From the IMG/VR virus record IMGVR_UViG_3300027896_005002, positions 62,001 through 126,000 of that record: a stretch of 64,000 nucleotides of DNA, one strand, 5' to 3'. The translations under genes and the position numbers were made by a program. Shown piece after piece: positions 3,785-27,581 of the stretch; the first letter of the stretch is position 1, and the number at the start of each line of letters is the position of its first letter. The notes beneath the pieces are model-generated. The model saw nothing but the letters and a program-made list of their open reading frames with translations. It had not been told where the DNA came from and did no database searches.

Positions 3785-4504
3785 CTAAATTTCTATGATA
3801 TCTTCATATAAAATAGTAAAATTATCTATAACAACATTAGCATGGAAATGTCCACAAAAATATTTTTTAAATTGAATTCTATTACAAACTTCATCTAAAA
3901 ATTTTGCAGTAGGATCTAAATATTTACTATAATCATGATCATCCATCTCAATAATGTCAACACCTGAAGCTATCATAAATTTTGCAATCATTCCTTGCGG
4001 TAATGTATGAGCTATTATATAATCTACTTTATTTCCATGTATTTCTAAATTAGTTATTGCATAATCCATTTCTTTATAAGAAGGTATCTCATTCCTCCAA
4101 ATACTTACACCTTCAATTCGACTAGCATCATCAACACTTTTTGCACCGCCCATACAAAAAAATGTTTTACTCTCAATCGTATATATCTCACCACGCTTTA
4201 AATAAAAAATACTATCAGATACTACACCAACTTTACCACCAAATTTTTCAATAATTGGCAACTCTGCTAATCTATCATGATTTTCATGATTACCATCAAT
4301 AAAAAGTATGGTAAATGGTTTTTCATTTAACCATTTTTTCCAATAAATTTCTTCTTTATCTGGTTCGTAAAACCATAACAAACCAAAATCACCGGTAATT
4401 ATCACATAATCATTTTTAGTAAGAGATTTACCTTGAGGAAAATTTGTAGTATTTAATTTCCGAATATCTATCGGAATATGTGTGTCACCAGTTATATAAA
4501 TCAT
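3785..4504 (-). CDS. calcineurin-like metallophosphoesterase
   Basis: GDTH, GDFG, GNHE, AHT, GHFH motifs. Confidence 0.9.
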   Translation of the reverse strand: MIYITGDTHIPIDIRKLNTTNFPQGKSLTKNDYVIITGDFGLLWFYEPDKEEIYWKKWLNEKPFTILFIDGNHENHDRLAELPIIEKFGGKVGVVSDSIFYLKRGEIYTIESKTFFCMGGAKSVDDASRIEGVSIWRNEIPSYKEMDYAITNLEIHGNKVDYIIAHTLPQGMIAKFMIASGVDIIEMDDHDYSKYLDPTAKFLDEVCNRIQFKKYFCGHFHANVVIDNFTILYEDIIEI

Positions 4505-5334
4505 ATCTCTATTTCATATAAATTACTAGGAAAACATGGACAAATATCATAGGGACAAATTATTGCTTTATTACTTAATTGACTCTCGACAGTTAAATTT
4601 TGTACAAATATATTTCCTAAATAACGATGACTACCCCAACATTCTCTAACAGTACCATCATTAAGTACTATCATATACTTATAGCCAGCCACACATACTT
4701 GACCTTTTCTACAAGTTGTTCTATTATATTCTAAAGAAAATTTATTATATCCATGCTCTTTACACAATTCCAAATAATGTTGTATTTTTAATAACTGTTC
4801 ATCAGTATAATTAAACTTATGCCATAAAGAATTTTTTATCAAGAGAGGTATTAAATATATATTCTTACTTAAAAACCATTCAAACAATTCATCATATTGT
4901 AATAATGCATAATCATCACAGACTTGCACTAACATAACATAAAAGCCTGCATCTTTTAATTTATTAATCTGCGTAACAATTTGTTCTCTTTTAAAATGCA
5001 GTCTATCTCTTTCTTTAATATGTAATGCTGCCATAATAAATTTAACTCGATCGACTGATACATTTTTAATAAAATCATCAACAGAAATTGTTAAATTAGT
5101 ATATAACGTAATACAATGCTGTTCAGTCAAAAATTTACAAATTTTAACAAAATCAGTATTTAAAAATAATTCTCCTCCAGACAATGCCCATAAACATTGA
5201 TTTTTAAATCTACTTATAGCTTTTTTTACTTCATCAAATTTAGGCCCTAATGCACTTTTATCTTTCGGATCGTTAATACAATATTCACAATTAAAATTAC
5301 AAATCCTATTAAAATTCCAGTCTATAGTTAACAT
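4501..5334 (-). CDS. radical SAM protein with SPASM/twitch-like tail
   Basis: CNFNCEYC, SGGE, C-terminal C..G...VRECW..LGNI..C...C.C. Confidence 0.87.
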   Translation of the reverse strand: MLTIDWNFNRICNFNCEYCINDPKDKSALGPKFDEVKKAISRFKNQCLWALSGGELFLNTDFVKICKFLTEQHCITLYTNLTISVDDFIKNVSVDRVKFIMAALHIKERDRLHFKREQIVTQINKLKDAGFYVMLVQVCDDYALLQYDELFEWFLSKNIYLIPLLIKNSLWHKFNYTDEQLLKIQHYLELCKEHGYNKFSLEYNRTTCRKGQVCVAGYKYMIVLNDGTVRECWGSHRYLGNIFVQNLTVESQLSNKAIICPYDICPCFPSNLYEIEI

Positions 5335-5637: not shown

Positions 5638-5717
5638 TGCCCGTGATTGGAATCGAACCAACATTTTCAGCTTCCTTTACGATTATCTGTTTAGGAAACA
5701 GACTCGGCTACACGGGC
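5638..5717 (-). tRNA. non-canonical tRNA-Arg(CCT), rearranged D region
   Basis: GCCCGTG/CACGGGC, 8-nt linker, TCTGT-TTCCTAA-ACAGA, 23-nt segment starting TAATCGTAA, T-arm GTTGG-TTCGATT-CCAAT. Confidence 0.75.
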
Positions 5718-6824: not shown

Positions 6825-7616
6825 ATGGGTACTTCACAAGGTAACTTCAAAAGAAAACTTACTGGATTTTATGATAATGAAGATCGAAAAAAACAATGGA
6901 GTCAAGCTAGAATTAATACAAACAAAAATTCGGTCATTCTTAATCATAAAAAAACAATTCAGCAATTAACAAAATTAAAAATTAATGTTCAATGGTTTGA
7001 ACTACAATTGCAACAACATCGTATTACCACAATTACTAAAAATTTAAAATTACTTGACATTAAACATCCAAAACTAGCACTTAAATATTTAAAATCTTTA
7101 TTAGAGCCAAAACGATTAAAAGAAATTGCAAAAGAAAAACGAACATCTAAAACATCTGTCACACTTAAAAATCGATTGAGAACTGATATCATACTGAAAA
7201 AGAAATATATTAAAAATCTAACAAAGAGAAATCATCATAAATATCGATCAAAAGGTGAATTACGTCTCAAACATTGGTTACAAAAAACTTATCCTTACTA
7301 TAATTGGAAAAGTATACATTTAACTTATAACAATTCAATTTATGAATTCGATATCTATTCAGAACAATATGACGATTTTTTCATTGAATATAACGGCGCT
7401 TGTCATTATAAACAAATTCATAGTTTAGAAAACTTTCAGCGTATTCAATGTCGAGATGAACAAAAAATACAAATAATGAAAGAACTTAATAAAGAATTTC
7501 TAATCATCAAGGACAGCATGTCCTTTGAAGAACAAACAAAAACTGTGACAAAATTCTTTAATTTAAGTAGTAATCTTCAAATTAAAAAATTGGAGGTGCG
7601 GGGACACTTTATCTGA
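6825..7616 (+). CDS. free-standing DUF559/Vsr-like (EDxHD-type) putative homing endonuclease
   Basis: Basic N-terminal half, then SKGE..YEFDIY..FIEYNGACHY..RDEQK. Confidence 0.72.
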   Translation: MGTSQGNFKRKLTGFYDNEDRKKQWSQARINTNKNSVILNHKKTIQQLTKLKINVQWFELQLQQHRITTITKNLKLLDIKHPKLALKYLKSLLEPKRLKEIAKEKRTSKTSVTLKNRLRTDIILKKKYIKNLTKRNHHKYRSKGELRLKHWLQKTYPYYNWKSIHLTYNNSIYEFDIYSEQYDDFFIEYNGACHYKQIHSLENFQRIQCRDEQKIQIMKELNKEFLIIKDSMSFEEQTKTVTKFFNLSSNLQIKKLEVRGHFI

Positions 7617-8231
7617 TGTTTTCACACCAGTGTGGACTATCTCTTCATCCAATTGGATGATGGGCGCTAATAAAGGATTATTGATTGAGTTTCTCACCTT
7701 TTAGTCTCTGCACTTTCCAACCTACAAAACACTCTTTCAGTTGGCTTAGCTCAGGATTGCCATATCATTTTACTGATTTAGGGTTCCCTGAATTCACCCA
7801 TTTTCTTCATCAATTGTTACCAATTGAGTCAACCATTTTGATTGAACCCCGGTCCAGAAAGTTTTCCATGACAATTACTACATGTTTATTCTATTCTATC
7901 TTGAATACTCACTCCGTAAATAGACAAGCGTTCAATGAGTACTTCGTAAGTGTCACTTCGGTCCCCTTCTCTTTTACGCGTTCGGTTGTCCTATCCGTAT
8001 ATAAACAGTTCAAGTTGCTACGGCTCCGCTTAAACTTCGACCGCCTTTATTTAGGCAGCCATTGCTGGTGCCTTTGCGCACATTGCAGCGAACTGCAATG
8101 CGAACTGAGCACCGAAAACTGAACCAATTTTGTTGGCAGTTGTTGTTTCATTGGATGATTTAAGAGGCCAACCAATGAGTCCTCTACATGCAATTATCAC
8201 TTCACCCAATCTGTCGAAACCTGACACCCCC
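7591..8231 (-). ncRNA. ssrA: tmRNA split by a T-loop intron (exon1 7841-8231, exon2 7591-7604)
   Basis: 5' GGGGGTGTCAGGTTTCGACAG; acceptor GGGGGTG/CACCTCC with G3-U70; resume context ACAACT-GCC; tag ANKIGSVFGAQFALQFAAMCAKAPAMAA (8051-8137); T-arm CGGGG-TTCAAT|T-CCCCG. Confidence 0.92.
7605..7840 (-). mobile_element. ORF-less group I intron (IC3-like, 236 nt)
   Basis: P1 TCAAT/GTTGA with U-G splice-site pair; core motifs GGCAATCCTGAGC, TGCAGAGACT, AGATAGTCC; terminal G at 7605. Confidence 0.9.
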
Positions 8232-8249
8232 ATAATTTCAAAGAACATT

Positions 8250-8430
8250 AAATCTGGCTGCCGTGCCGCAGCCACCGTTTCATCGAATAGGTACTTACCA
8301 TGGCTATTCGCTATCCTCTACAATGATGCCGAAGCACTAACCACGACACGTCAAGCCAAAGGTATCATATGGTCTCAGCTTGACCGTCCCTGTGACAAGA
8401 GCAAAGGTCGTTAATCATGTCGCCATATGA
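8250..8430 (-). ncRNA. unassigned structured RNA upstream of tmRNA
   Basis: GC-enriched intergenic segment with helices TCATATGG/CCATATGA, CGACAT/GTGTCG, GTCAAGC/GCTTGAC, CGAATAG/CTATTCG, GGCTGC/GCAGCC. Confidence 0.5.
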
Positions 8431-8440
8431 CTTATCAAAT

Positions 8441-8995
8441 TCACATTTTCTCTTTAACAAATATTTTTGCAATGTTATAAGCGTCATCAACACCTCTGTG
8501 ATGACGACCTTCAAGAGGAATATCTAACATTGTTAAAGCTTTATCCATTCCTATAGGTTTTATTTTATGCCTCTCAGCAAATTCATGTTTAAGACTTCTA
8601 CTAATTTTAAATGGTACTTCAATATCATATCTTTTACAATCTTTAGCTAACTGTCGATGATCATAGAAGCCCCAAGAACAAAATATAAAATTACTTAAAC
8701 TTTTCTCTGTTATTAAATAAACATTTTCTCGCCAAATATCCATTACAGTTCTAAAATCTTTTGCAATATCTATGGTAAATTGTTCAATACCGGTCAGTCG
8801 TCTACAAAAATCTGATAACATCGGATTCAATTGTGGTTTAACAAATAAACCTTGTGATAAAATTATGCGATAATCATCAGTAACAATTGAATAACCAATT
8901 TCAATTATTTCATTTTCATTTCGATTTGCTTTTACTCGACCTTCATTAGTATTTCTATCCCAACAAGTTGCTTCAAAATCTACTATTAAATACAT
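8441..8995 (-). CDS. DEDDh 3'-5' exonuclease (ERI-1/KapD-like)
   Basis: VDFEATC, EIIEIG, WGFYD, HHRGVDDA. Confidence 0.9.
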   Translation of the reverse strand: MYLIVDFEATCWDRNTNEGRVKANRNENEIIEIGYSIVTDDYRIILSQGLFVKPQLNPMLSDFCRRLTGIEQFTIDIAKDFRTVMDIWRENVYLITEKSLSNFIFCSWGFYDHRQLAKDCKRYDIEVPFKISRSLKHEFAERHKIKPIGMDKALTMLDIPLEGRHHRGVDDAYNIAKIFVKEKM

Positions 8996-10371: not shown

Positions 10372-10445
10372 TGGGACTGGTAGGAGTCGAACCTACGACC
10401 TCAACTTTGTAAGAGTTGCATTCTGTACCACTGAAATACAGTCCC
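10372..10445 (-). tRNA. tRNA-Val(TAC)
   Basis: GGGACTG/CAGTCCC, CAACT-CTTACAA-AGTTG. Confidence 0.92.
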
Positions 10446-11436
10446 GATTATTCAAATTTTTAAATTCTCTTACTAAATGTGACATTCTAGTTGTACTAGT
10501 TTGCCACTTATTTGCTAATCTAGAAATTAAACCATATTCATTTATATCTATAACCATAGCTAATTCAACAAAAATTTGTTTTTTCTTATTTAAACGTTGT
10601 GATTCACACGGTGACAATTTTTTAATATTATTAATTTTAAAAAATCGACTTAATTGTCTTTCAGATATAGCAAGCTTACTAGCAATTGTTTTATTATCTA
10701 ATCCTTCATCAACTAATTGAATTATTTCTTTTGCTTTATTAGAAACATCATTAATTACAATTTCTTTTTGTAATTTAATTTCATTTGTAACATTTAAGCT
10801 TTTTGTTTCTAAAAATTGTTTTAATTGATTAATAACTGTGTCAAAATTTTTACAAATAGCTCTAGCATGAATATTTATTACCTTCCAACCTCTTTCAATA
10901 ATATATTTTTCACGATCAACATAATAAGATTTTAGTTCATTATTAAAATAATGAGCATTGCCATTGACTTCTATATCAATTTTTAAATTTATTATTGCAA
11001 AATCCATTCTATAATTTCTGTCAAAATCATCTGGTGTATATTCTTGAATAATTTTTTCATCAACATTACATTCTAACCATTGTCTTAATATTTTCTCAGG
11101 ATATGTTTCTTTTTTCTTTCGCCAAGGATGATTTATTCTAGTTTTTAACCACTTTGATGTACTTTTTGACAATCGTTTTTTAGATTCTTCTGTATGTTGA
11201 ACTGGATATTTCTTTCTAGCTAATATCATTGCTTCACTTAAATTACGTCTATTTTTAATTGCAAGTTTTGTAATAAATCTTGGAAAACGACCTAAATGTC
11301 TTATTTCTCGCAATGATAAACCATTTTTATAATACAATTCTTTTACTTTATCGATGTCATCTTTAGTTACACATTTATGATTTGTAAATGCACCATTATT
11401 TGTAAAAGATCTATTACATTTTTGACATTTTATCAT
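10393..11436 (-). CDS. Zn-finger + DUF559-type putative homing endonuclease + HTH
   Basis: CQKC..H.C N-terminus; TYPE..YRMDF..DIEVNGNAHY..DRE; last codons run into tRNA-Val. Confidence 0.75.
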   Translation of the reverse strand: MIKCQKCNRSFTNNGAFTNHKCVTKDDIDKVKELYYKNGLSLREIRHLGRFPRFITKLAIKNRRNLSEAMILARKKYPVQHTEESKKRLSKSTSKWLKTRINHPWRKKKETYPEKILRQWLECNVDEKIIQEYTPDDFDRNYRMDFAIINLKIDIEVNGNAHYFNNELKSYYVDREKYIIERGWKVINIHARAICKNFDTVINQLKQFLETKSLNVTNEIKLQKEIVINDVSNKAKEIIQLVDEGLDNKTIASKLAISERQLSRFFKINNIKKLSPCESQRLNKKKQIFVELAMVIDINEYGLISRLANKWQTSTTRMSHLVREFKNLNNRDCISVVQNATLTKLRS

Positions 11437-19263: not shown

Positions 19264-19344
19264 TAGGAGAGGAGGGATTTGAACCCTCATCTGCCACATA
19301 CCGTTACGATTATCCGCCTTATAAGAGCGGCTCGGTACTCTCCT
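19264..19344 (-). tRNA. non-canonical tRNA-Ile(TAT), rearranged D region
   Basis: AGGAGAG/CTCTCCT, 7-nt linker TACCGAG, CCGCT-CTTATAA-GGCGG, ATAATCGTAACGGTA.., T-arm GAGGG-TTCAAAT-CCCTC. Confidence 0.75.
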
Positions 19345-23012: not shown

Positions 23013-24518
23013 TCATAGTTGTGTAACAAGTTGTTTAGAAATAATTTTTTTAATCATACGTCTAGTAATTTTATATTTTTTAATTAATACTCCAATCTTA
23101 AAACCATTTTGATAATCATTAATTATATCATTGATTCTGAATGAAACATTTCTATCACACCATCTCTTTTTAATAAAATATCCACTATTTTTTATACTAA
23201 TATTATTATCTAAAAACAATTGTTTAACCTTTTTATTCAACACATTATATTTTCTACAAATTTTACTTAATGAATTATTATTTTTATAATCATCAATTAT
23301 TTGTTTTGCAAGATCACTTGTTATTATAGTTTTTATTTTGTAAAATCGTTTTATAGTATACTTTGTATTGTACTTAATAAATCTTTTTACTTGTGTTTGT
23401 GATACATTCCATAATTTTGCAAGTATAGCAAATGTTCCACGTTTATTAATATCAACTTTTTCAAGATCATTTAATCTATTTTGACGTAATTCATTTCTTA
23501 TTTTTATAATTTTACTTATTTTTTCATTTTTTCTTTTAGTAATCTCTGCTAGATTATTAAGCGCTACCAACTGTTTATCAGTATATTGTGAAATTAAAAC
23601 ATCTCTTTTTTCAGATGATTTAAGAATAGATTTTATTTCTTGAAACTTATCTTTTGAATTATAACAAATTGCTCGCCAACAAATTCTAAATACCGTAATA
23701 TTATTTAATTTAAGCAATGCATCTTTCTTTTTATCAATTTCCTGACGTCGCTTATATCTATAATGTTGTTGACCGTCAATTTCAATAGCTAATGATAATT
23801 TAGGAAAGAAAAAATCTACTCTATAAACAGAAAAAGGAAATTCAGTATAAAAATCATCATTAAGTTTATATCCTTCATTAATTAAAAATTTAAAAAAAGT
23901 TTTCTCAGCATATGACTGATTGTCTTGTTTATACCAAGAATTAGCTCTATTTTCAGCATGCATTATTTTACATTTTTCAGACCACTTTTTTCTTGATTCA
24001 TCTGACCACTTAAAAGTATATTTTTTATGAGCTAATTTCGATGCATCTGCGACAGATCGTCTATAACATTTTAATGCAAAATGTATGAGACCTGTATCAA
24101 AACCTTGATTATGTAATTCACGCGATGATAATCCAGAATCATATAGATTACGAATTTTTATAACATCATTATCTTCATAACATTTATGTCGTTTATAATT
24201 ACCACTATTAAATGATCTATTACATTTTTTACAAATAATTTTTTTATCACTAAAACTATTTATTGCTTTTTTCCTATATATTTTAGTATGTGCAATTTTT
24301 AATGTATCACTAGCAGTTCTTTTCAAATCTTTTATACATCTATTTATTTGATTTCGTGTATAACCTATTTGAATTATATCTTTTATTAATAATCCAGAAT
24401 TATACAAATCTCTAATTTTCTGTCTATCGTTCTCAGATATCTTACAATATTTCTTATGTGAAAAAAAACTTCCAGGATTCGTAAAAAAATTACCGCAATT
24501 CTCGCAACATAATTTCAT
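23013..24518 (-). CDS. double Zn-finger + DUF559-type putative homing endonuclease + HTHs
   Basis: Two CxxC..H..C/LY.SG repeats; SYAE..YRVDF..AIEIDGQQHY..D; paralog of 10393-11436. Confidence 0.78.
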   Translation of the reverse strand: MKLCCENCGNFFTNPGSFFSHKKYCKISENDRQKIRDLYNSGLLIKDIIQIGYTRNQINRCIKDLKRTASDTLKIAHTKIYRKKAINSFSDKKIICKKCNRSFNSGNYKRHKCYEDNDVIKIRNLYDSGLSSRELHNQGFDTGLIHFALKCYRRSVADASKLAHKKYTFKWSDESRKKWSEKCKIMHAENRANSWYKQDNQSYAEKTFFKFLINEGYKLNDDFYTEFPFSVYRVDFFFPKLSLAIEIDGQQHYRYKRRQEIDKKKDALLKLNNITVFRICWRAICYNSKDKFQEIKSILKSSEKRDVLISQYTDKQLVALNNLAEITKRKNEKISKIIKIRNELRQNRLNDLEKVDINKRGTFAILAKLWNVSQTQVKRFIKYNTKYTIKRFYKIKTIITSDLAKQIIDDYKNNNSLSKICRKYNVLNKKVKQLFLDNNISIKNSGYFIKKRWCDRNVSFRINDIINDYQNGFKIGVLIKKYKITRRMIKKIISKQLVTQL

Positions 24519-25298: not shown

Positions 25299-25377
25299 CA
25301 GGAGCGAAGAGACTCGAACTCTCATTTTCAACCAAATTACAAGTATATGGTTTTGGAGACCACACTGTTACGCTCCT
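25299..25377 (-). tRNA. non-canonical tRNA-Trp(CCA), rearranged D region
   Basis: AGGAGCG/CGCTCCT-G, 7-nt linker, GTGGT-CTCCAAA-ACCAT, ATACTTGTAATTTGGTTGAAAAT, T-arm GAGAG-TTCGAGT-CTCTT. Confidence 0.72.
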
Positions 25378-26416: not shown

Positions 26417-27436
26417 TTAATTATATTCTCTTATAAAACAATTCTCATTATAAAAATTCAACATATACTTTTTCATCCATTTACTTACTTTTTGATGTTT
26501 TATTCCTATCAATTCTGCTACTTTAGAAACCCAACCGAATTTAGAAAAACTAATTTTAGATTGTAAAATAGCATTAATTTTACTTTCAATATTTATTTGT
26601 TTTATTAATTTTTTATTTTCTCGTTTTAATTTTCTTTGATTGATTCGTTGATTTTGTTTTTTTACTTTCTGATTCATAATATTTTTAATGCCAACAGTAT
26701 ATTCATATTCAAACACTTTTCCATTTTTATTAAATTCCTTTATTTTAGTCAATAAAGATTTTATATCAAATCCTCGTCTATTTAAATATTTTTTAATTTC
26801 TTTTATTGTTGTTCTAGTAACTAATCTAATTATATAACCATTTGATCTAAATGCTTGTAATTGATTATTACACTCGTCTGTCAATTGTCCTTTTACTTCA
26901 TAAATTTTTCCATTTATTTCAAAATCATTTCTATATGTACGATCATTATATTGAACGGTTATATTCTCATAATTAAAATTAATATTCTTCTTTGCTAAAA
27001 ATAATGCAAAAATAAACTCGTATGAACTTCTTAAAAAAAACTTTTTATTATTATAATAAAAATAGCATCTTTTAAATTTATTTGATATTGGCGGCTGTCT
27101 TTTACCTTCTTTATATAATCTTTTTAATGTTTCAGAAAGCTTTAAATTCGCTGCTTTATTTTTCTTATCATCTTGTCGCCAATTTAATAATGGATTATCT
27201 GTATTAGAATTGTACGAGTTCCATCTATCCTTCATTCTTATTTTCATAGTTTCAGCCATCTTCATAATTGAAGGATGTGTTTCTTTTGTTAACCCTTTTA
27301 ACCACGGTTTACTATGATCAAATCTATCACCGGGTCTAACATCTATGCCCTGTTGTTTTAATCTACAATAATAAACATGACCACCAACTTGTGATCCTTT
27401 TTCAAATTGTCTTCCACAAATTTCACAACTGAACAT
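26417..27436 (-). CDS. Zn-finger + PD-(D/E)xK putative homing endonuclease
   Basis: Start moved to MFSCEICG (SD AGGAGG); LRSSYE..YE..YRNDF..YEVKG. Confidence 0.72.
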   Translation of the reverse strand: MFSCEICGRQFEKGSQVGGHVYYCRLKQQGIDVRPGDRFDHSKPWLKGLTKETHPSIMKMAETMKIRMKDRWNSYNSNTDNPLLNWRQDDKKNKAANLKLSETLKRLYKEGKRQPPISNKFKRCYFYYNNKKFFLRSSYEFIFALFLAKKNINFNYENITVQYNDRTYRNDFEINGKIYEVKGQLTDECNNQLQAFRSNGYIIRLVTRTTIKEIKKYLNRRGFDIKSLLTKIKEFNKNGKVFEYEYTVGIKNIMNQKVKKQNQRINQRKLKRENKKLIKQINIESKINAILQSKISFSKFGWVSKVAELIGIKHQKVSKWMKKYMLNFYNENCFIREYN

Positions 27437-27507
27437 AAAATCCTCCTTTTTAATAGGAAGATTTATAAACAGAATAGAAATTCGCATGTCTACCAAATAT
27501 AATAAAT

Positions 27508-27581
27508 TGCGCGCGATGAGATTCGAACTCATACCTGCTGATTTCTAAGACCAGTGCATCTACCAATTGTGCAACGCGCGC
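27508..27581 (-). tRNA. tRNA-Leu(TAG) with short variable loop
   Basis: GCGCGCG/CGCGCGC, CTGGT-CTTAGAA-ATCAG, 5-nt variable loop. Confidence 0.85.

What the first reader, a model, noticed from the sequence alone, without database searches (positions are those of the whole stretch)
7591..8231. Phage tmRNA interrupted by a group I intron in the T-loop
Seen: complete tmRNA hallmarks, a 236-nt intron with a U-G P1 splice site after GGGGTTCAAT, the catalytic core motifs and a terminal G. Splicing restores the T-loop TTCAATT. Known: T-loop tmRNA introns are rare and were first reported in Clostridium botulinum. The 3' exon is only 14 nt and lacks an encoded CCA, so splicing and CCA addition are both needed. 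One-piece gene finders will miss or truncate it.
Basis: partly seen in the sequence, partly recalled or inferred. Interest (0 to 1): 0.72.

Follow-up and report, generated by a model that had tools for sequence, protein, structure and literature searches.

The report
Intron-split tmRNA gene in a huge phage
A 416-kb freshwater phage carries its own ribosome-rescue RNA (tmRNA) gene, split in the T-loop by an intact-looking self-splicing group I intron; this gene form is well known in bacteria, I found no report of it in phages, and standard gene finders miss it.

Summary
On the minus strand, 7591-8231 holds a tmRNA gene: exon 1 is 8231-7841, a 236-nt group I intron is 7840-7605, and a 14-nt exon 2 is 7604-7591.

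- **Models:** Rfam scores the intron 91 bits and the tmRNA 80 bits. ARAGORN finds nothing in the unspliced DNA. It finds a full 405-nt tmRNA once the 236 nt are removed.
- **Intron fold:** All helices P1-P9 plus P7.1/P7.1a form, with U(-1)·G in P1 and a terminal G. They covary across 36 related introns.
- **Independent relative:** A ~92% relative in another study keeps the intron. It shows a compensatory U-A to C-G change in P9 and loop-only indels. It also encodes CCA exactly where the window lacks it.
- **Host genome:** The contig is a phage: it has a tail sheath gene, no rRNA and 28 tRNAs.

The gene form is not new. 883 bacterial intron-form tmRNAs are catalogued, most with the intron at this same T-loop position 7. 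The phage setting appears unreported. Three further intron-split tmRNA sequence types turned up, at least two of them in huge phages, and these look to carry the intron at T-loop position 3. Splicing itself is inferred; no RNA data were available.

The parts
7591..8231 (-). Whole intron-form tmRNA gene (641 nt precursor; 405 nt after splicing, 408 with CCA)
   Evidence: Rfam tmRNA 80 bits and Intron_gpI 91 bits. ARAGORN finds a tmRNA spanning 1-405 only in the spliced form.
7841..8231 (-). Exon 1 (391 nt): 5' acceptor strand, PK1, tag reading frame, pseudoknot region, 5' T-stem and T-loop nt 1-6
8225..8231 (-). Acceptor stem 5' strand GGGGGTG. It pairs with 7592-7598 and includes G3·U70, the alanine identity pair.
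   Evidence: Pair list GC GC GT GC GC TA GC
8149..8185 (-). Pseudoknot PK1: stem 1 is AGAGG (8185-8181) with CCTCT (8167-8163); stem 2 is CATTGG (8177-8172) with CCAATG (8154-8149)
   Evidence: Motif coordinates. The Rfam alignment places stem 2 at the model's PK1 hairpin.
8051..8137 (-). Tag reading frame: resume codon GCC (8137-8135), 28 codons (ANKIGSVFGAQFALQFAAMCAKAPAMAA), stop TAA (8053-8051)
   Evidence: ARAGORN. In relatives, two of the three listed substitutions are synonymous third-position changes, one is Leu to Met, and one indel is in frame.
8040..8059 (-). Hairpin GCTGCC/GGCGGT with the stop codons in its loop (the tmRNA helix 5 position)
7847..7851 (-). T-stem 5' strand CGGGG
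7841..7846 (-). T-loop nt 1-6 (TTCAAT). The 5' splice site follows U at 7841.
7605..7840 (-). Group I intron, 236 nt, no internal ORF of note (no homing endonuclease gene)
   Evidence: Rfam 91 bits. Hand-derived structure verified. Unconstrained fold recovers it, z = -2.5. Covariation.
7829..7845 (-). P1: exon TCAAT plus intron C (7845-7840) pairs with the internal guide GGTTGA (7834-7829). U7841·G7833 is the wobble at the 5' splice site.
   Evidence: U·G is the commonest pair at this column in the family. In bacterial tmRNA introns the exon G is matched by a guide C.
7811..7826 (-). P2: CAATTG/CAATTG with a GUAA tetraloop
   Evidence: all 6 pairs show changes on both sides
7646..7801 (-). Catalytic core. 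P3 7801-7795/7666-7660; P4 7791-7786/7756-7751; P5 and P5a 7783-7760; P6 and P6a 7750-7712; P7 5' strand GACTA 7706-7702; P7.1 and P7.1a 7701-7672; P8 7659-7646
7635..7639 (-). P7 3' strand TAGTC, within the conserved ...GATAGTCC element. It pairs with 7706-7702.
   Evidence: P7 is nearly invariant in 31 related introns
7613..7630 (-). P9: CTGGTGT/ACATCAG with a GAAA tetraloop
   Evidence: A compensatory U-A to C-G change at 7624/7619 is seen in the relative from runs X2 and X3.
7605..7605 (-). Terminal (omega) G of the intron; the 3' splice site follows it
   Evidence: It is the only G that restores a 7-nt T-loop
7591..7604 (-). Exon 2 (14 nt): T-loop nt 7 (T), T-stem 3' strand CCCCG, acceptor 3' strand CACCTCC, discriminator A. 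No CCA is encoded.
   Evidence: The relative has CCA inserted directly after 7591.
8441..8995 (-). Context: RNase T-family 3'-5' exonuclease ORF directly upstream on the same strand. A role in RNA 3'-end trimming is speculation.
   Evidence: Pfam RNase_T 54 bits; KapD-like 65 bits, below cut-off
6825..7616 (+). Context: convergent 263-aa ORF. Its last 26 nt overlap, antisense, exon 2 and the end of the intron.
   Evidence: 13 of 24 substitutions against the relative fall at codon position 3.

Best explanation
This is a functional phage-encoded tmRNA gene of the known 'intron form'.

**Shown from sequence**
- The tmRNA has a tRNA-Ala-like acceptor stem with G3·U70, pseudoknot PK1, a 28-codon tag frame whose stop codons lie in a hairpin loop, and a T-arm.
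- The T-loop is interrupted between loop nt 6 and 7 by a complete 236-nt group I intron. The intron has P1-P9 plus P7.1/P7.1a, no homing endonuclease gene, U(-1)·G in P1 and a terminal G.

**Inferred mechanism**
1. The precursor is transcribed within the tRNA island. The T-stem strands and P1 bring the two splice sites together.
2. The intron self-splices by the usual two transesterifications, started by a free guanosine. This ligates UUCAAU to U and restores the T-loop.
3. RNase P makes the 5' end. The 3' end is trimmed and CCA is added. The phage itself encodes a CCA-adding-type nucleotidyltransferase.
4. Host AlaRS charges the RNA. With host SmpB it rescues stalled ribosomes during infection, tagging the nascent chains with a peptide that ends in AMAA.
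For: - **Family scores:** Rfam Intron_gpI 91 bits and tmRNA 80 bits.
- **Spliced form only:** ARAGORN recognises a tmRNA only after exact removal of 7840-7605.
- **Fold:** Every helix forms, and an unconstrained fold recovers most of them, z = -2.5.
- **Covariation:** Across 36 related introns, 94.5% of cells are paired, against 33-40% when partners are slid. 50 of 59 pairs change on both sides. P7 is almost invariant.
- **Independent relative:** Runs X2 and X3, from another study, hold a ~92% relative. One contig runs continuously across exon 2, the intron and part of exon 1, and no intron-less joint was seen.
- **Selection in the relative:** It has 3 substitutions in 172 nt across exon 2 and the intron, against 23 in 156 nt in the flank. 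The only paired-site change is compensatory (P9), and the indels lie in loops L1 and L8.
- **3' end:** The relative encodes CCA exactly after 7591, which fixes the 3' end.
- **Tag frame:** Of the three listed substitutions, two are synonymous and one is Leu to Met; the one indel is in frame.
- **Same geometry in bacteria:** Bacterial intron-form tmRNAs L053 and L054 have ...TTCGAT|CAAAATGG...ATG|TCCCC. The exon G (A in the window) is matched by a guide C (T in the window).
- **Precedent:** The C. botulinum tmRNA intron is reported to self-splice (PMC2729099).
- **CCA enzyme:** The phage has a 503-aa CCA-adding-type ORF.
- **Phage identity:** Tail sheath gene and no SSU rRNA.
Against: - No RNA evidence exists: no RNA run was listed, so splicing, end maturation, charging and tagging are all unobserved.
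- P10 is essentially absent (about 1 bp by inspection), so exon alignment must rely on the T-stem.
- No SmpB was found in the 416 kb held, which is about 77% of the genome. The RNA would depend on host SmpB.
- CCA is not encoded here, although most of the phage's tRNAs, including tRNA-Ala, do encode it.
- The CCA-enzyme ORF scores below the NCBIfam equivalog cut-off (313 against 438.8 bits).
- The covariation alignment was fitted to my own model, which inflates the percentage paired.
Confidence: 0.85

Rival explanations
1. The gene is real, but splicing is not autonomous or is regulated. The intron would need a protein cofactor, or would act as a gate that delays or limits mature phage tmRNA to a stage of infection.
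For: P10 is missing and the intron is small. Many natural group I introns splice poorly without proteins (general knowledge). The gene lies among endonuclease-like and RNA-processing ORFs.
Against: The core is canonical and close to introns of tRNA genes. The C. botulinum tmRNA intron is reported to self-splice in vitro (PMC2729099). Nothing in the sequence points to a specific cofactor.
Confidence: 0.1
2. It is a decaying or inactive copy: a tmRNA pseudogene whose intron no longer splices, with the loss of the CCA as a sign of decay.
For: CCA is lacking whereas the close relative encodes it. No phage SmpB was found. The tag is unusually long (28 aa, against the usual ~10 aa stated in PMC11915505).
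Against: All helices, U·G, the terminal G and P7 are intact. The intron and exon 2 are about 8-fold more conserved than the flank, with a compensatory change. Tag-frame changes are mostly synonymous or in frame. Several of the phage's own tRNAs also lack CCA, and a CCA-adding-type enzyme is encoded.
Confidence: 0.04
3. It is not a phage gene. The contig would be a small cellular genome or a chimeric assembly, and this is an ordinary bacterial intron-form tmRNA.
For: Gene G+C is 42% against 31% for the genome. The intron site and the first intron bases match bacterial cases. Pfam Terminase_6N gave no hit.
Against: The contig is a single 416-kb IMG/VR virus record. It has a myovirus tail sheath related to jumbo phages (E 1e-44 to 4e-63) and no SSU rRNA. 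It carries 28 tRNAs clustered with homing-endonuclease-like ORFs. An independent Logan contig of the source run spans the locus with 0 differences, and a relative from another study keeps the same flanks. Structured RNA genes are normally richer in G+C than an AT-rich genome. The mature tmRNA is only 43-45% identical to the bacterial examples.
Confidence: 0.02

Closest known systems
Bacterial intron-form tmRNA genes (Williams 2002; 883 unique sequences in PMC11915505), for example the 287-nt self-splicing intron of Clostridium botulinum (PMC2729099)
   Same: - A group I intron sits in the T-loop at internucleotide position 7 (after loop nt 6), with U(-1)·G, a terminal G and a very short 3' exon.
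- Two Bacillota examples fetched here (L053, L054) start the intron with the same or nearly the same bases (CAAAATGG; TCAAAAGAG) and end ...ATG|TCCCC.
- The P7.1 region is present.
   Different: - The gene lies in a huge phage, not a bacterium.
- The intron is shorter (236 nt, against 280-289 nt in L053/L054 and a reported mean of 293 nt).
- CCA is not encoded.
- The tag is 28 aa, against ANDNYALAA-type tags.
- The intron is only 63-64% identical to the bacterial ones over model positions. It scores higher against phage introns (97-130 bits) than against L053/L054 (57-64 bits).
- Mature exons are only 43-45% identical.
Intron-split tmRNAs of other huge phages found here: IMG/VR contigs of 348 and 344 kb (L018, L019), the 735-kb LR756501 (L007) and metagenome contig L041 (source unknown)
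   Same: - Three of the four sit in huge-phage records; L041 is a 1.8-kb metagenome contig of unknown source.
- Each tmRNA has G3·U70, discriminator A and no encoded CCA. Tags are long in L018 and L007 (22 and 33 aa by ARAGORN); L041's frame ends ...EELALAA.
- The intron belongs to the same family (97-125 bits with my model) and sits in the T-loop.
- ARAGORN finds L018 and L007 only after the intron is removed. It did not call L041 even when spliced.
   Different: - The best boundary solution puts their intron at loop position 3 (UU|...G|CGAAU gives UUCGAAU), not position 7.
- L007 has A, not G, at the intron's last position in that solution.
- Their tmRNA bodies are unrelated to the window's beyond family level (43-44% identity).
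Group I introns in tRNA anticodon loops, bacterial (bioRxiv 10.1101/2020.01.27.920355) and, seen here, in phages
   Same: These are the closest introns by score and identity. They lie in an unannotated tRNA-CAU of Escherichia phage Turkey5 and Klebsiella phage Muenster (128-130 bits, 69-70% identity). They share the same compact architecture with a GNRA-capped P2 and P9.
   Different: They interrupt the anticodon loop of a tRNA rather than the T-loop of a tmRNA. In Turkey5 an HNH endonuclease gene follows the tRNA.
Standard (uninterrupted) phage tmRNAs, for example Bacillus phage G and the huge-phage tmRNAs of Al-Shayeb et al. 2020 (PMC7162821)
   Same: A tmRNA encoded by a large phage alongside many tRNAs and translation-related genes.
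   Different: Those were called with ARAGORN as one-piece genes. This one is invisible to ARAGORN because of the intron.

Membership tests
Group I intron (Rfam RF00028) | Covariance-model score above the curated gathering score | tested here: met
   91 bits against 50, E 5e-22, model positions 1-253
Group I intron (Rfam RF00028) | P1 helix formed by the 5' exon end and an internal guide, with a U·G wobble at the 5' splice site | tested here: met
   TCAAT|C pairs with GGTTGA; U7841·G7833. U·G is the commonest pair at that column in 31 distinct relatives.
Group I intron (Rfam RF00028) | Terminal guanosine (omega G) before the 3' splice site | tested here: met
   G7605 is the only choice that restores a 7-nt T-loop
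Group I intron (Rfam RF00028) | Conserved core helices P3-P8, including P7 (the guanosine-binding helix), supported by covariation | tested here: met
   All helices form. 94.5% of cells are paired against 33-40% slid, and 50 of 59 pairs are compensatory. P7 GACUA/UAGUC is nearly invariant. Caveat: the alignment was fitted to the model.
Group I intron (Rfam RF00028) | Guanosine-dependent self-splicing activity | not testable with these tools
   No RNA run was listed. This needs an in vitro splicing assay or RNA-seq.
Subgroup IA-type group I intron (extra P7.1/P7.1a between P7 and P3'). The IA3 label for the C. botulinum intron is from my memory of Williams 2002. | P7.1 and P7.1a hairpins between P7 and the 3' strand of P3 | tested here: inconclusive
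   Helices 7701-7697/7676-7672 and 7696-7693/7689-7686 form and covary (helices 9 and 10). Other subgroup criteria were not examined, and no subgroup-specific model was available.
tmRNA (Rfam RF00023) | Covariance-model score above the gathering score | tested here: met
   80 bits against 47, E 2e-29, even with the 3' end displaced by the intron
tmRNA (Rfam RF00023) | tRNA-Ala-like acceptor stem: 7 bp with G3·U70 and discriminator A | tested here: met
   GGGGGTG/CACCTCC, pairs GC GC GT GC GC TA GC, discriminator A
tmRNA (Rfam RF00023) | T-arm with a 5-bp stem and a 7-nt T-loop | tested here: met
   Met only after splicing: CGGGG-UUCAAUU-CCCCG. ARAGORN calls the 3' tRNA domain at 368-405 of the spliced form.
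tmRNA (Rfam RF00023) | Tag reading frame with an Ala resume codon after PK1, ending in stop codons in a hairpin loop | tested here: met
   Resume codon GCC at 8137, aligned to the model's resume position. 28 codons and TAA lie in the loop of GCTGCC/GGCGGT. Changes in relatives are mostly synonymous or in frame.
tmRNA (Rfam RF00023) | 3'-terminal CCA | tested here: not met
   CCA is not encoded; ATT follows the discriminator. This is not disqualifying. CCA can be added after transcription, several tRNAs of this phage also lack it, a CCA-adding-type ORF is present, and the close relative encodes it.
tmRNA (Rfam RF00023) | Works with SmpB in trans-translation | not testable with these tools
   No SmpB was found in the 416 kb held. 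Dependence on host SmpB is assumed.
Intron-form tmRNA gene (PMC11915505) | Group I intron inside the T-loop at one of the known subsites (2, 3, 7, 8), with -1 U, a terminal G and reconstitution of the loop | tested here: met
   Position 7 (after loop nt 6), the main known site
Intron-form tmRNA gene (PMC11915505) | Match to the authors' tmRNA_intron covariance model (lowest known score 225 bits; smallest known gene 545 bp) | not tested
   That model is not in Rfam 15 and was not available here. The gene length of 641 bp is within the known range.

The most novel reading that the evidence does not exclude
Huge phages carry a mobile pool of one compact group I intron family. In this reading the family moves among tRNA anticodon loops, tmRNA T-loops (at two or more subsites) and protein genes such as terminase, and phages are the vehicles that seeded T-loop introns into bacterial tmRNA genes of many phyla, or the reverse. 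The window's position-7 intron would then be an insertion independent of the position-3 introns of the other huge phages. That would be repeated invasion of the same 7-nt loop within the phage world.
Probability: 0.2. Interest if true: 0.65.

Novelty: new member of a known kind. Interest (0 to 1): 0.45.

Why it matters
- **Missed genes:** Surveys of phage translation genes call tmRNAs with ARAGORN (for example PMC7162821). ARAGORN cannot see this gene form, so phage tmRNAs are under-counted. Four distinct intron-split tmRNA sequence types turned up here within a few pattern scans; three are in huge-phage records and one is a short metagenome contig.
- **Wider distribution:** It extends a gene form catalogued only for bacteria (883 sequences, 21 phyla) to viruses. 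It also shows the same intron family at two T-loop subsites and in phage tRNA genes. This bears on how often, and from where, tmRNA genes were invaded.
- **A route to the bench:** The closest relatives of the intron lie in unannotated tRNA-CAU genes of cultured jumbo phages (Turkey5, Muenster). Splicing of this family can therefore be tested in the laboratory.
- **Limit:** The mechanism itself, self-splicing that restores a T-loop, is established biology.

Tried and rejected
- **Megablast** of the locus against GenBank phages: no match.
- **First viral pattern** (GGGTTYRAT...TGGGTGAATT...): 0 hits, too strict.
- **Looser patterns**: 23 loci with introns of the family, but only L018 and L019 are tmRNAs. 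The rest sit in other genes.
- **Two pattern calls** failed on syntax and were corrected.
- **Species-representative bacterial genomes**, same pattern: 4 hits, all chance, with no intron by Rfam or by my model.
- **Bacillota sample** of 151 genomes with my model: only 2 intron-form tmRNAs. Widening to their class gave just 3 genomes. I had no handle for Clostridia or Bacteroidota, so bacterial sampling is thin.
- **FastTree tree** of 31 introns on 241 model columns: unresolved, with no support values computed, and the alignment is biased towards the window. I draw no conclusion on ancestry.
- **RNA runs:** none was listed. Of the DNA runs, one holds the locus itself (probably its source sample) and two hold a relative.
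- **SmpB (PF01668):** no hit in the genome.
- **Terminase_6N:** no hit. **Phage_sheath_1:** only 19.9 bits, resolved by tblastn.
- **Sheath-related phages** LR745208 and Tunturi_5 have no intron of this family.
- **Williams 2002 (PMC99078)** is not held. The supplements of PMC11915505 held as text contain no phage entries.
- **Promoter and terminator scan:** nothing convincing for the tmRNA itself.
- **Alternative 3' splice sites** at G7607 or G7613 are rejected because they give 9- or 15-nt T-loops.
- **CCA reading:** taking the last CCA of CACCTCCA as the tail is rejected because it leaves a 4-nt acceptor strand.
- **Complex prediction and structure prediction** were not used; they are not relevant to an RNA gene.
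Full report
**1. What is in the sequence**

The feature lies on the minus strand. Read 5' to 3', the RNA starts at 8231 with GGGGGTG and runs through a typical tmRNA body to ...GGACCGGGGTTCAAT, ending at 7841. A 236-nt insert follows (7840-7605), and the gene ends with TCCCCGCACCTCCA (7604-7591).

GGGGGTG pairs with CACCTCC over 7 bp, with G·U at the third pair. That pair is the alanine identity element shared by tRNA-Ala and tmRNA. The discriminator is A, and ATTTTT follows, so no CCA is encoded. CGGGG (7851-7847) and CCCCG (7603-7599) form the T-stem. Removing the insert joins UUCAAU to U, giving a 7-nt T-loop.

Rfam 15 scores 7613-7854 as Intron_gpI at 91 bits (gathering score 50) and 7839-8224 as tmRNA at 80 bits (gathering score 47). 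ARAGORN finds 22 tRNAs in the window but no tmRNA. It finds nothing in the unspliced gene either. In the spliced sequence it finds a tmRNA covering exactly 1-405. The tag is ANKIGSVFGAQFALQFAAMCAKAPAMAA.

So is the prediction that one-piece gene finders fail.

**2. Anatomy of the intron**

I derived the helices by hand and checked them in a script.

| Helix | Coordinates and sequence | Note |
|---|---|---|
| P1 | TCAAT\|C (7845-7840) with GGTTGA (7834-7829) | U7841·G7833 wobble at the 5' splice site |
| P2 | 7826-7821 with 7816-7811 (CAAUUG/CAAUUG) | GUAA loop |
| P3 | 7801-7795 with 7666-7660 | |
| P4, P5/P5a, P6/P6a | within 7791-7712 | |
| P7 | GACUA (7706-7702) with UAGUC (7639-7635) | inside the conserved ...CAGAGACUA and ...GAUAGUCC elements |
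| P7.1/P7.1a | 7701-7672 | typical of IA-type introns |
| P8 | 7659-7646 | |
| P9 | 7630-7613 | GAAA loop |

Eight unpaired nucleotides follow P9 and end in G7605. P10 is essentially absent.

An unconstrained minimum-energy fold recovers P2, P3, P4, P5a, P6a, P7.1/7.1a, P8 and P9. The energy is -59.6 kcal/mol, with z = -2.5 against shuffles. When the exon flanks are included, the T-stem closes the whole intron. The intron holds no ORF of note and no homing endonuclease gene.

**3. Comparative support**

A covariance model built from the window sequence and this structure (R1) found 36 related introns in loci fetched by pattern scans and BLAST. On that alignment:

- 94.5% of cells form standard pairs, against 33-40% when the 3' partners are slid by 1-3 columns.
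- 50 of 59 pairs change on both sides.
- Every helix except the 2-bp P6 has compensatory pairs.
- P7 is nearly invariant.

The alignment is fitted to the model, so the percentage paired is inflated. The gap to the slid controls is too large for that alone to explain.

**4. An independent natural relative**

Run X1, the probable source sample, has a Logan contig that covers 7000-8800 with no differences. Runs X2 and X3 come from a different 2024 study and hold a relative about 92% identical. One X2 contig runs continuously from 7435 to 8092, which covers exon 2, the whole intron and part of exon 1. No joint that skips the intron was reported.

I mapped the listed differences onto the annotation.

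- **Density:** where both runs give coverage, there are 3 substitutions in 172 nt (7591-7762), against 23 in 156 nt of flank (7435-7590).
- **Paired sites:** two of the three substitutions are the two sides of one P9 pair, 7624 and 7619, changing U-A to C-G.
- **Loops:** the third substitution lies in the P6a loop. A 4-nt insertion lies in the P8 loop, and a 1-nt insertion lies in the P1 loop.
- **3' end:** the relative has TGG inserted after 7590 on the plus strand. On the RNA strand that is CCA directly after the discriminator. This confirms the 3' end at 7591 and shows that the window's lack of CCA is a 3-nt difference between close relatives.
- **Tag frame:** two of the three listed substitutions are synonymous third-position changes (codons 20 and 24), and one is Leu to Met (codon 14). 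A third variant in X1 has an in-frame 3-nt deletion.

The sample is small, but these patterns fit an RNA under structural selection and a tag frame that is translated.

**5. The genome**

- The window is bases 62001-126000 of a 416,029-bp IMG/VR virus record, which CheckV estimates to be 77% complete. G+C is 31%.
- It has 28 ARAGORN tRNAs and no SSU rRNA.
- A 703-aa ORF is a myovirus tail sheath. It is related to those of Tunturiibacter phage Tunturi_5, a 485-kb uncultured phage and Bacillus phage G.
- Around the tmRNA lie tRNA genes, DUF559/HNH endonuclease-like ORFs, radical-SAM ORFs and an RNase T-family exonuclease directly upstream.
- The genome encodes a 503-aa class II nucleotidyltransferase with PolyA_pol, RNA-binding, tRNA_NucTran2_2 and HD domains. 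Its best match is the CCA-adding equivalog TIGR02692, at 313 bits, below the strict cut-off of 438.8.
- Most of the phage's tRNAs encode CCA, but several do not. A CCA-adding activity is therefore needed in any case.
- No SmpB was found in the part of the genome held.

**6. Mechanism**

- **Shown:** the gene structure, the intact intron fold and its conservation.
- **Inferred from established group I and tmRNA biology:**
  1. The precursor is transcribed.
  2. The T-stem and P1 hold the splice sites together.
  3. A free guanosine attacks after U7841, and the freed 3' OH then attacks after G7605. This ligates the exons and restores the T-loop.
  4. RNase P makes the 5' end.
  5. The 3' end is trimmed and CCA is added.
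  6. AlaRS charges the RNA through G3·U70.
  7. With host SmpB it enters stalled ribosomes and adds a tag ending in AMAA.
- **Precedent:** the C. botulinum tmRNA intron, which is reported to self-splice (PMC2729099).
- **Missing:** no RNA run was listed, so none of these steps was observed.

**7. Comparison with what is known**

Intron-form tmRNA genes are a recognised gene form. [quoted passage not shown] Most are at internucleotide position 7, and smaller groups are at positions 2, 3 and 8. The window's intron is at position 7.

Two bacterial examples from a sample of 151 Bacillota genomes (L053, L054) show the same geometry. They read ...GGGGTTCGAT|CAAAATGGGTCGCC...ATG|TCCCCTCGCCTCCACCA. 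The exon difference (G where the window has A) is matched by a guide difference (C where the window has T).

In score and identity, however, the window intron is nearer to phage introns.

| Relative | Identity to window intron | R1 score (bits) |
|---|---|---|
| tRNA-CAU introns of Turkey5 and Muenster | 69-70% | 128-130 |
| L018 tmRNA intron | 67% | 125 |
| L053 and L054 (bacterial tmRNA introns) | 63-64% | 57-64 |

A FastTree tree does not resolve the relationships, and I draw no conclusion on ancestry. The mature tmRNA is 43-45% identical to all the others compared, so it is a lineage of its own.

**8. Is the phage setting new?**

- The huge-phage survey (PMC7162821) called tmRNAs with ARAGORN and does not mention introns.
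- The phage G paper reports a one-piece tmRNA.
- The 2025 tmRNA database paper searched RefSeq viruses but reports intron forms only for bacteria, plus one doubtful archaeal bin.
- Full-text searches for phage, tmRNA and intron combinations found nothing.

Within the limits of that library, intron-form tmRNAs in phages are unreported.

They are not unique to this window. With few scans I found three further intron-split tmRNA sequence types: L018/L019 (348- and 344-kb IMG/VR contigs, identical over this gene), L007 (the 735-kb LR756501) and L041 (a 1.8-kb metagenome contig of unknown source). All have G3·U70, discriminator A and no CCA. ARAGORN gives L018 and L007 long tags. It did not call L041 even after splicing, so L041 rests on its hallmark ends and its 77% identity to L007.

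In L018 and L041 only one boundary choice obeys both the -1 U·G rule and the terminal-G rule. It places the intron at loop position 3 (UU|...G|CGAAU gives UUCGAAU). That subsite is reported so far only for Bacteroidia. In L007 the same geometry leaves A as the last intron base.

**9. Verdict**

This is a new member, in a new kind of genome, of a known gene form, and the mechanism is conventional. Its value is practical and evolutionary: phage tmRNAs missed by standard annotation, and the same intron family in phage tRNA and tmRNA loops at different subsites.

Noticed in passing
L018:1838-2425 (-), identical in L019; IMG/VR contigs of 348,222 and 344,634 bp: Another huge-phage tmRNA split by an intron of the same family. 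The acceptor is GGGGCAT/ATGCTCC with G3·U70 and no CCA. ARAGORN's tag guess is DDIFDIVTSQEAVVESALEVVA. The only boundary choice with -1 U·G and a terminal G puts the intron at T-loop position 3 (UU|...G|CGAAU), not position 7.
   Followed up: partly
L007:1180-1795 (+) = LR756501.1 (735 kb uncultured phage); L038 and L040 score identically and are probably the same sequence: An intron-split tmRNA in the largest described phage genome. The record has no annotation. No boundary choice gives both -1 U and a terminal G: the position-3 solution has A as the last intron base, and the terminal-G solution has G at -1. It is either an unusual splice site or an inactive copy.
   Followed up: partly
L041:1060-1680 (+), metagenome contig Ga0172381_10168791: A fourth intron-split tmRNA, 77% identical to L007 in the mature part. 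Its frame ends ...EELALAA, and position-3 boundaries are canonical. ARAGORN did not call it even after splicing.
   Followed up: partly
L032:~2423-2740 (Escherichia phage Turkey5, PQ471516.1) and L033:~2423-2740 (Klebsiella phage Muenster, MT708547.1): The closest relatives of the window's intron lie in an unannotated gap of the tRNA cluster of cultured jumbo phages. In Turkey5 the flanks read as a tRNA with anticodon CAU, interrupted in the anticodon loop, and an HNH homing endonuclease gene follows. I did not read the Muenster flanks. These phages offer a culture system for testing this intron family.
   Followed up: partly
Outside the window: G000:C1:~315836-316110 (-), locus L006: A second group I intron in the same phage genome (Rfam 55 bits) splits a tRNA in its anticodon loop. 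An Asn(GUU) reading with other boundaries is also possible.
   Followed up: partly
window 6825-7616 (+): A 263-aa ORF with no family match ends 26 nt inside the tmRNA gene on the opposite strand, over exon 2 and the intron's last 12 nt. Against the X2/X3 relative, 13 of 24 substitutions fall at its third codon positions, so it is probably a real gene. The relative's CCA insertion is in frame for it.
   Followed up: partly
window 7590/7591 in runs X2 and X3: A ~92% relative from another study encodes the CCA tail that the window lacks. Presence or absence of an encoded CCA therefore varies between close relatives of this phage.
   Followed up: yes
window 8441-8995 (-) and G000:C1:210959-212470 (-) (L031:610-2121): RNA end-processing candidates encoded by the phage: an RNase T/KapD-like 3'-5' exonuclease directly upstream of the tmRNA, and a CCA-adding-type nucleotidyltransferase with an HD domain elsewhere in the genome.
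   Followed up: partly
window 8051-8137; L018; L007: The tags ARAGORN calls for these huge-phage tmRNAs are long: 28, 22 and 33 residues, ending AMAA, VVA and VLA. The usual bacterial length is about 10 residues. Whether such tags still direct proteolysis is unknown.
   Followed up: no
window 1-30000: This is a tRNA island interleaved with DUF559/Vsr-like and HNH endonuclease-like ORFs (10393-11436, 23013-24518, 26417-27532) and radical-SAM ORFs (1852-2757, 4501-5334). Rfam reports three tRNA-like hits that ARAGORN misses (5638-5717, 19264-19344, 25299-25377; 31-40 bits).
   Followed up: no
L034 (Vibrio phage 1.187.O, MG592553.1) 1343-2712; L020 10671-13630; L046 3000-5982: Several introns of the same family are packed into single loci. 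Three lie in the Vibrio phage's terminase gene, which is annotated as three separate 'terminase-like' CDSs. Five lie within 3 kb of IMG/VR contig L020.
   Followed up: no
window 8255-8274 (-): A G+C-rich hairpin followed by a T-rich tail lies 24 nt upstream of the tmRNA 5' end. It may terminate the upstream exonuclease gene. No convincing promoter for the tmRNA was seen.
   Followed up: no
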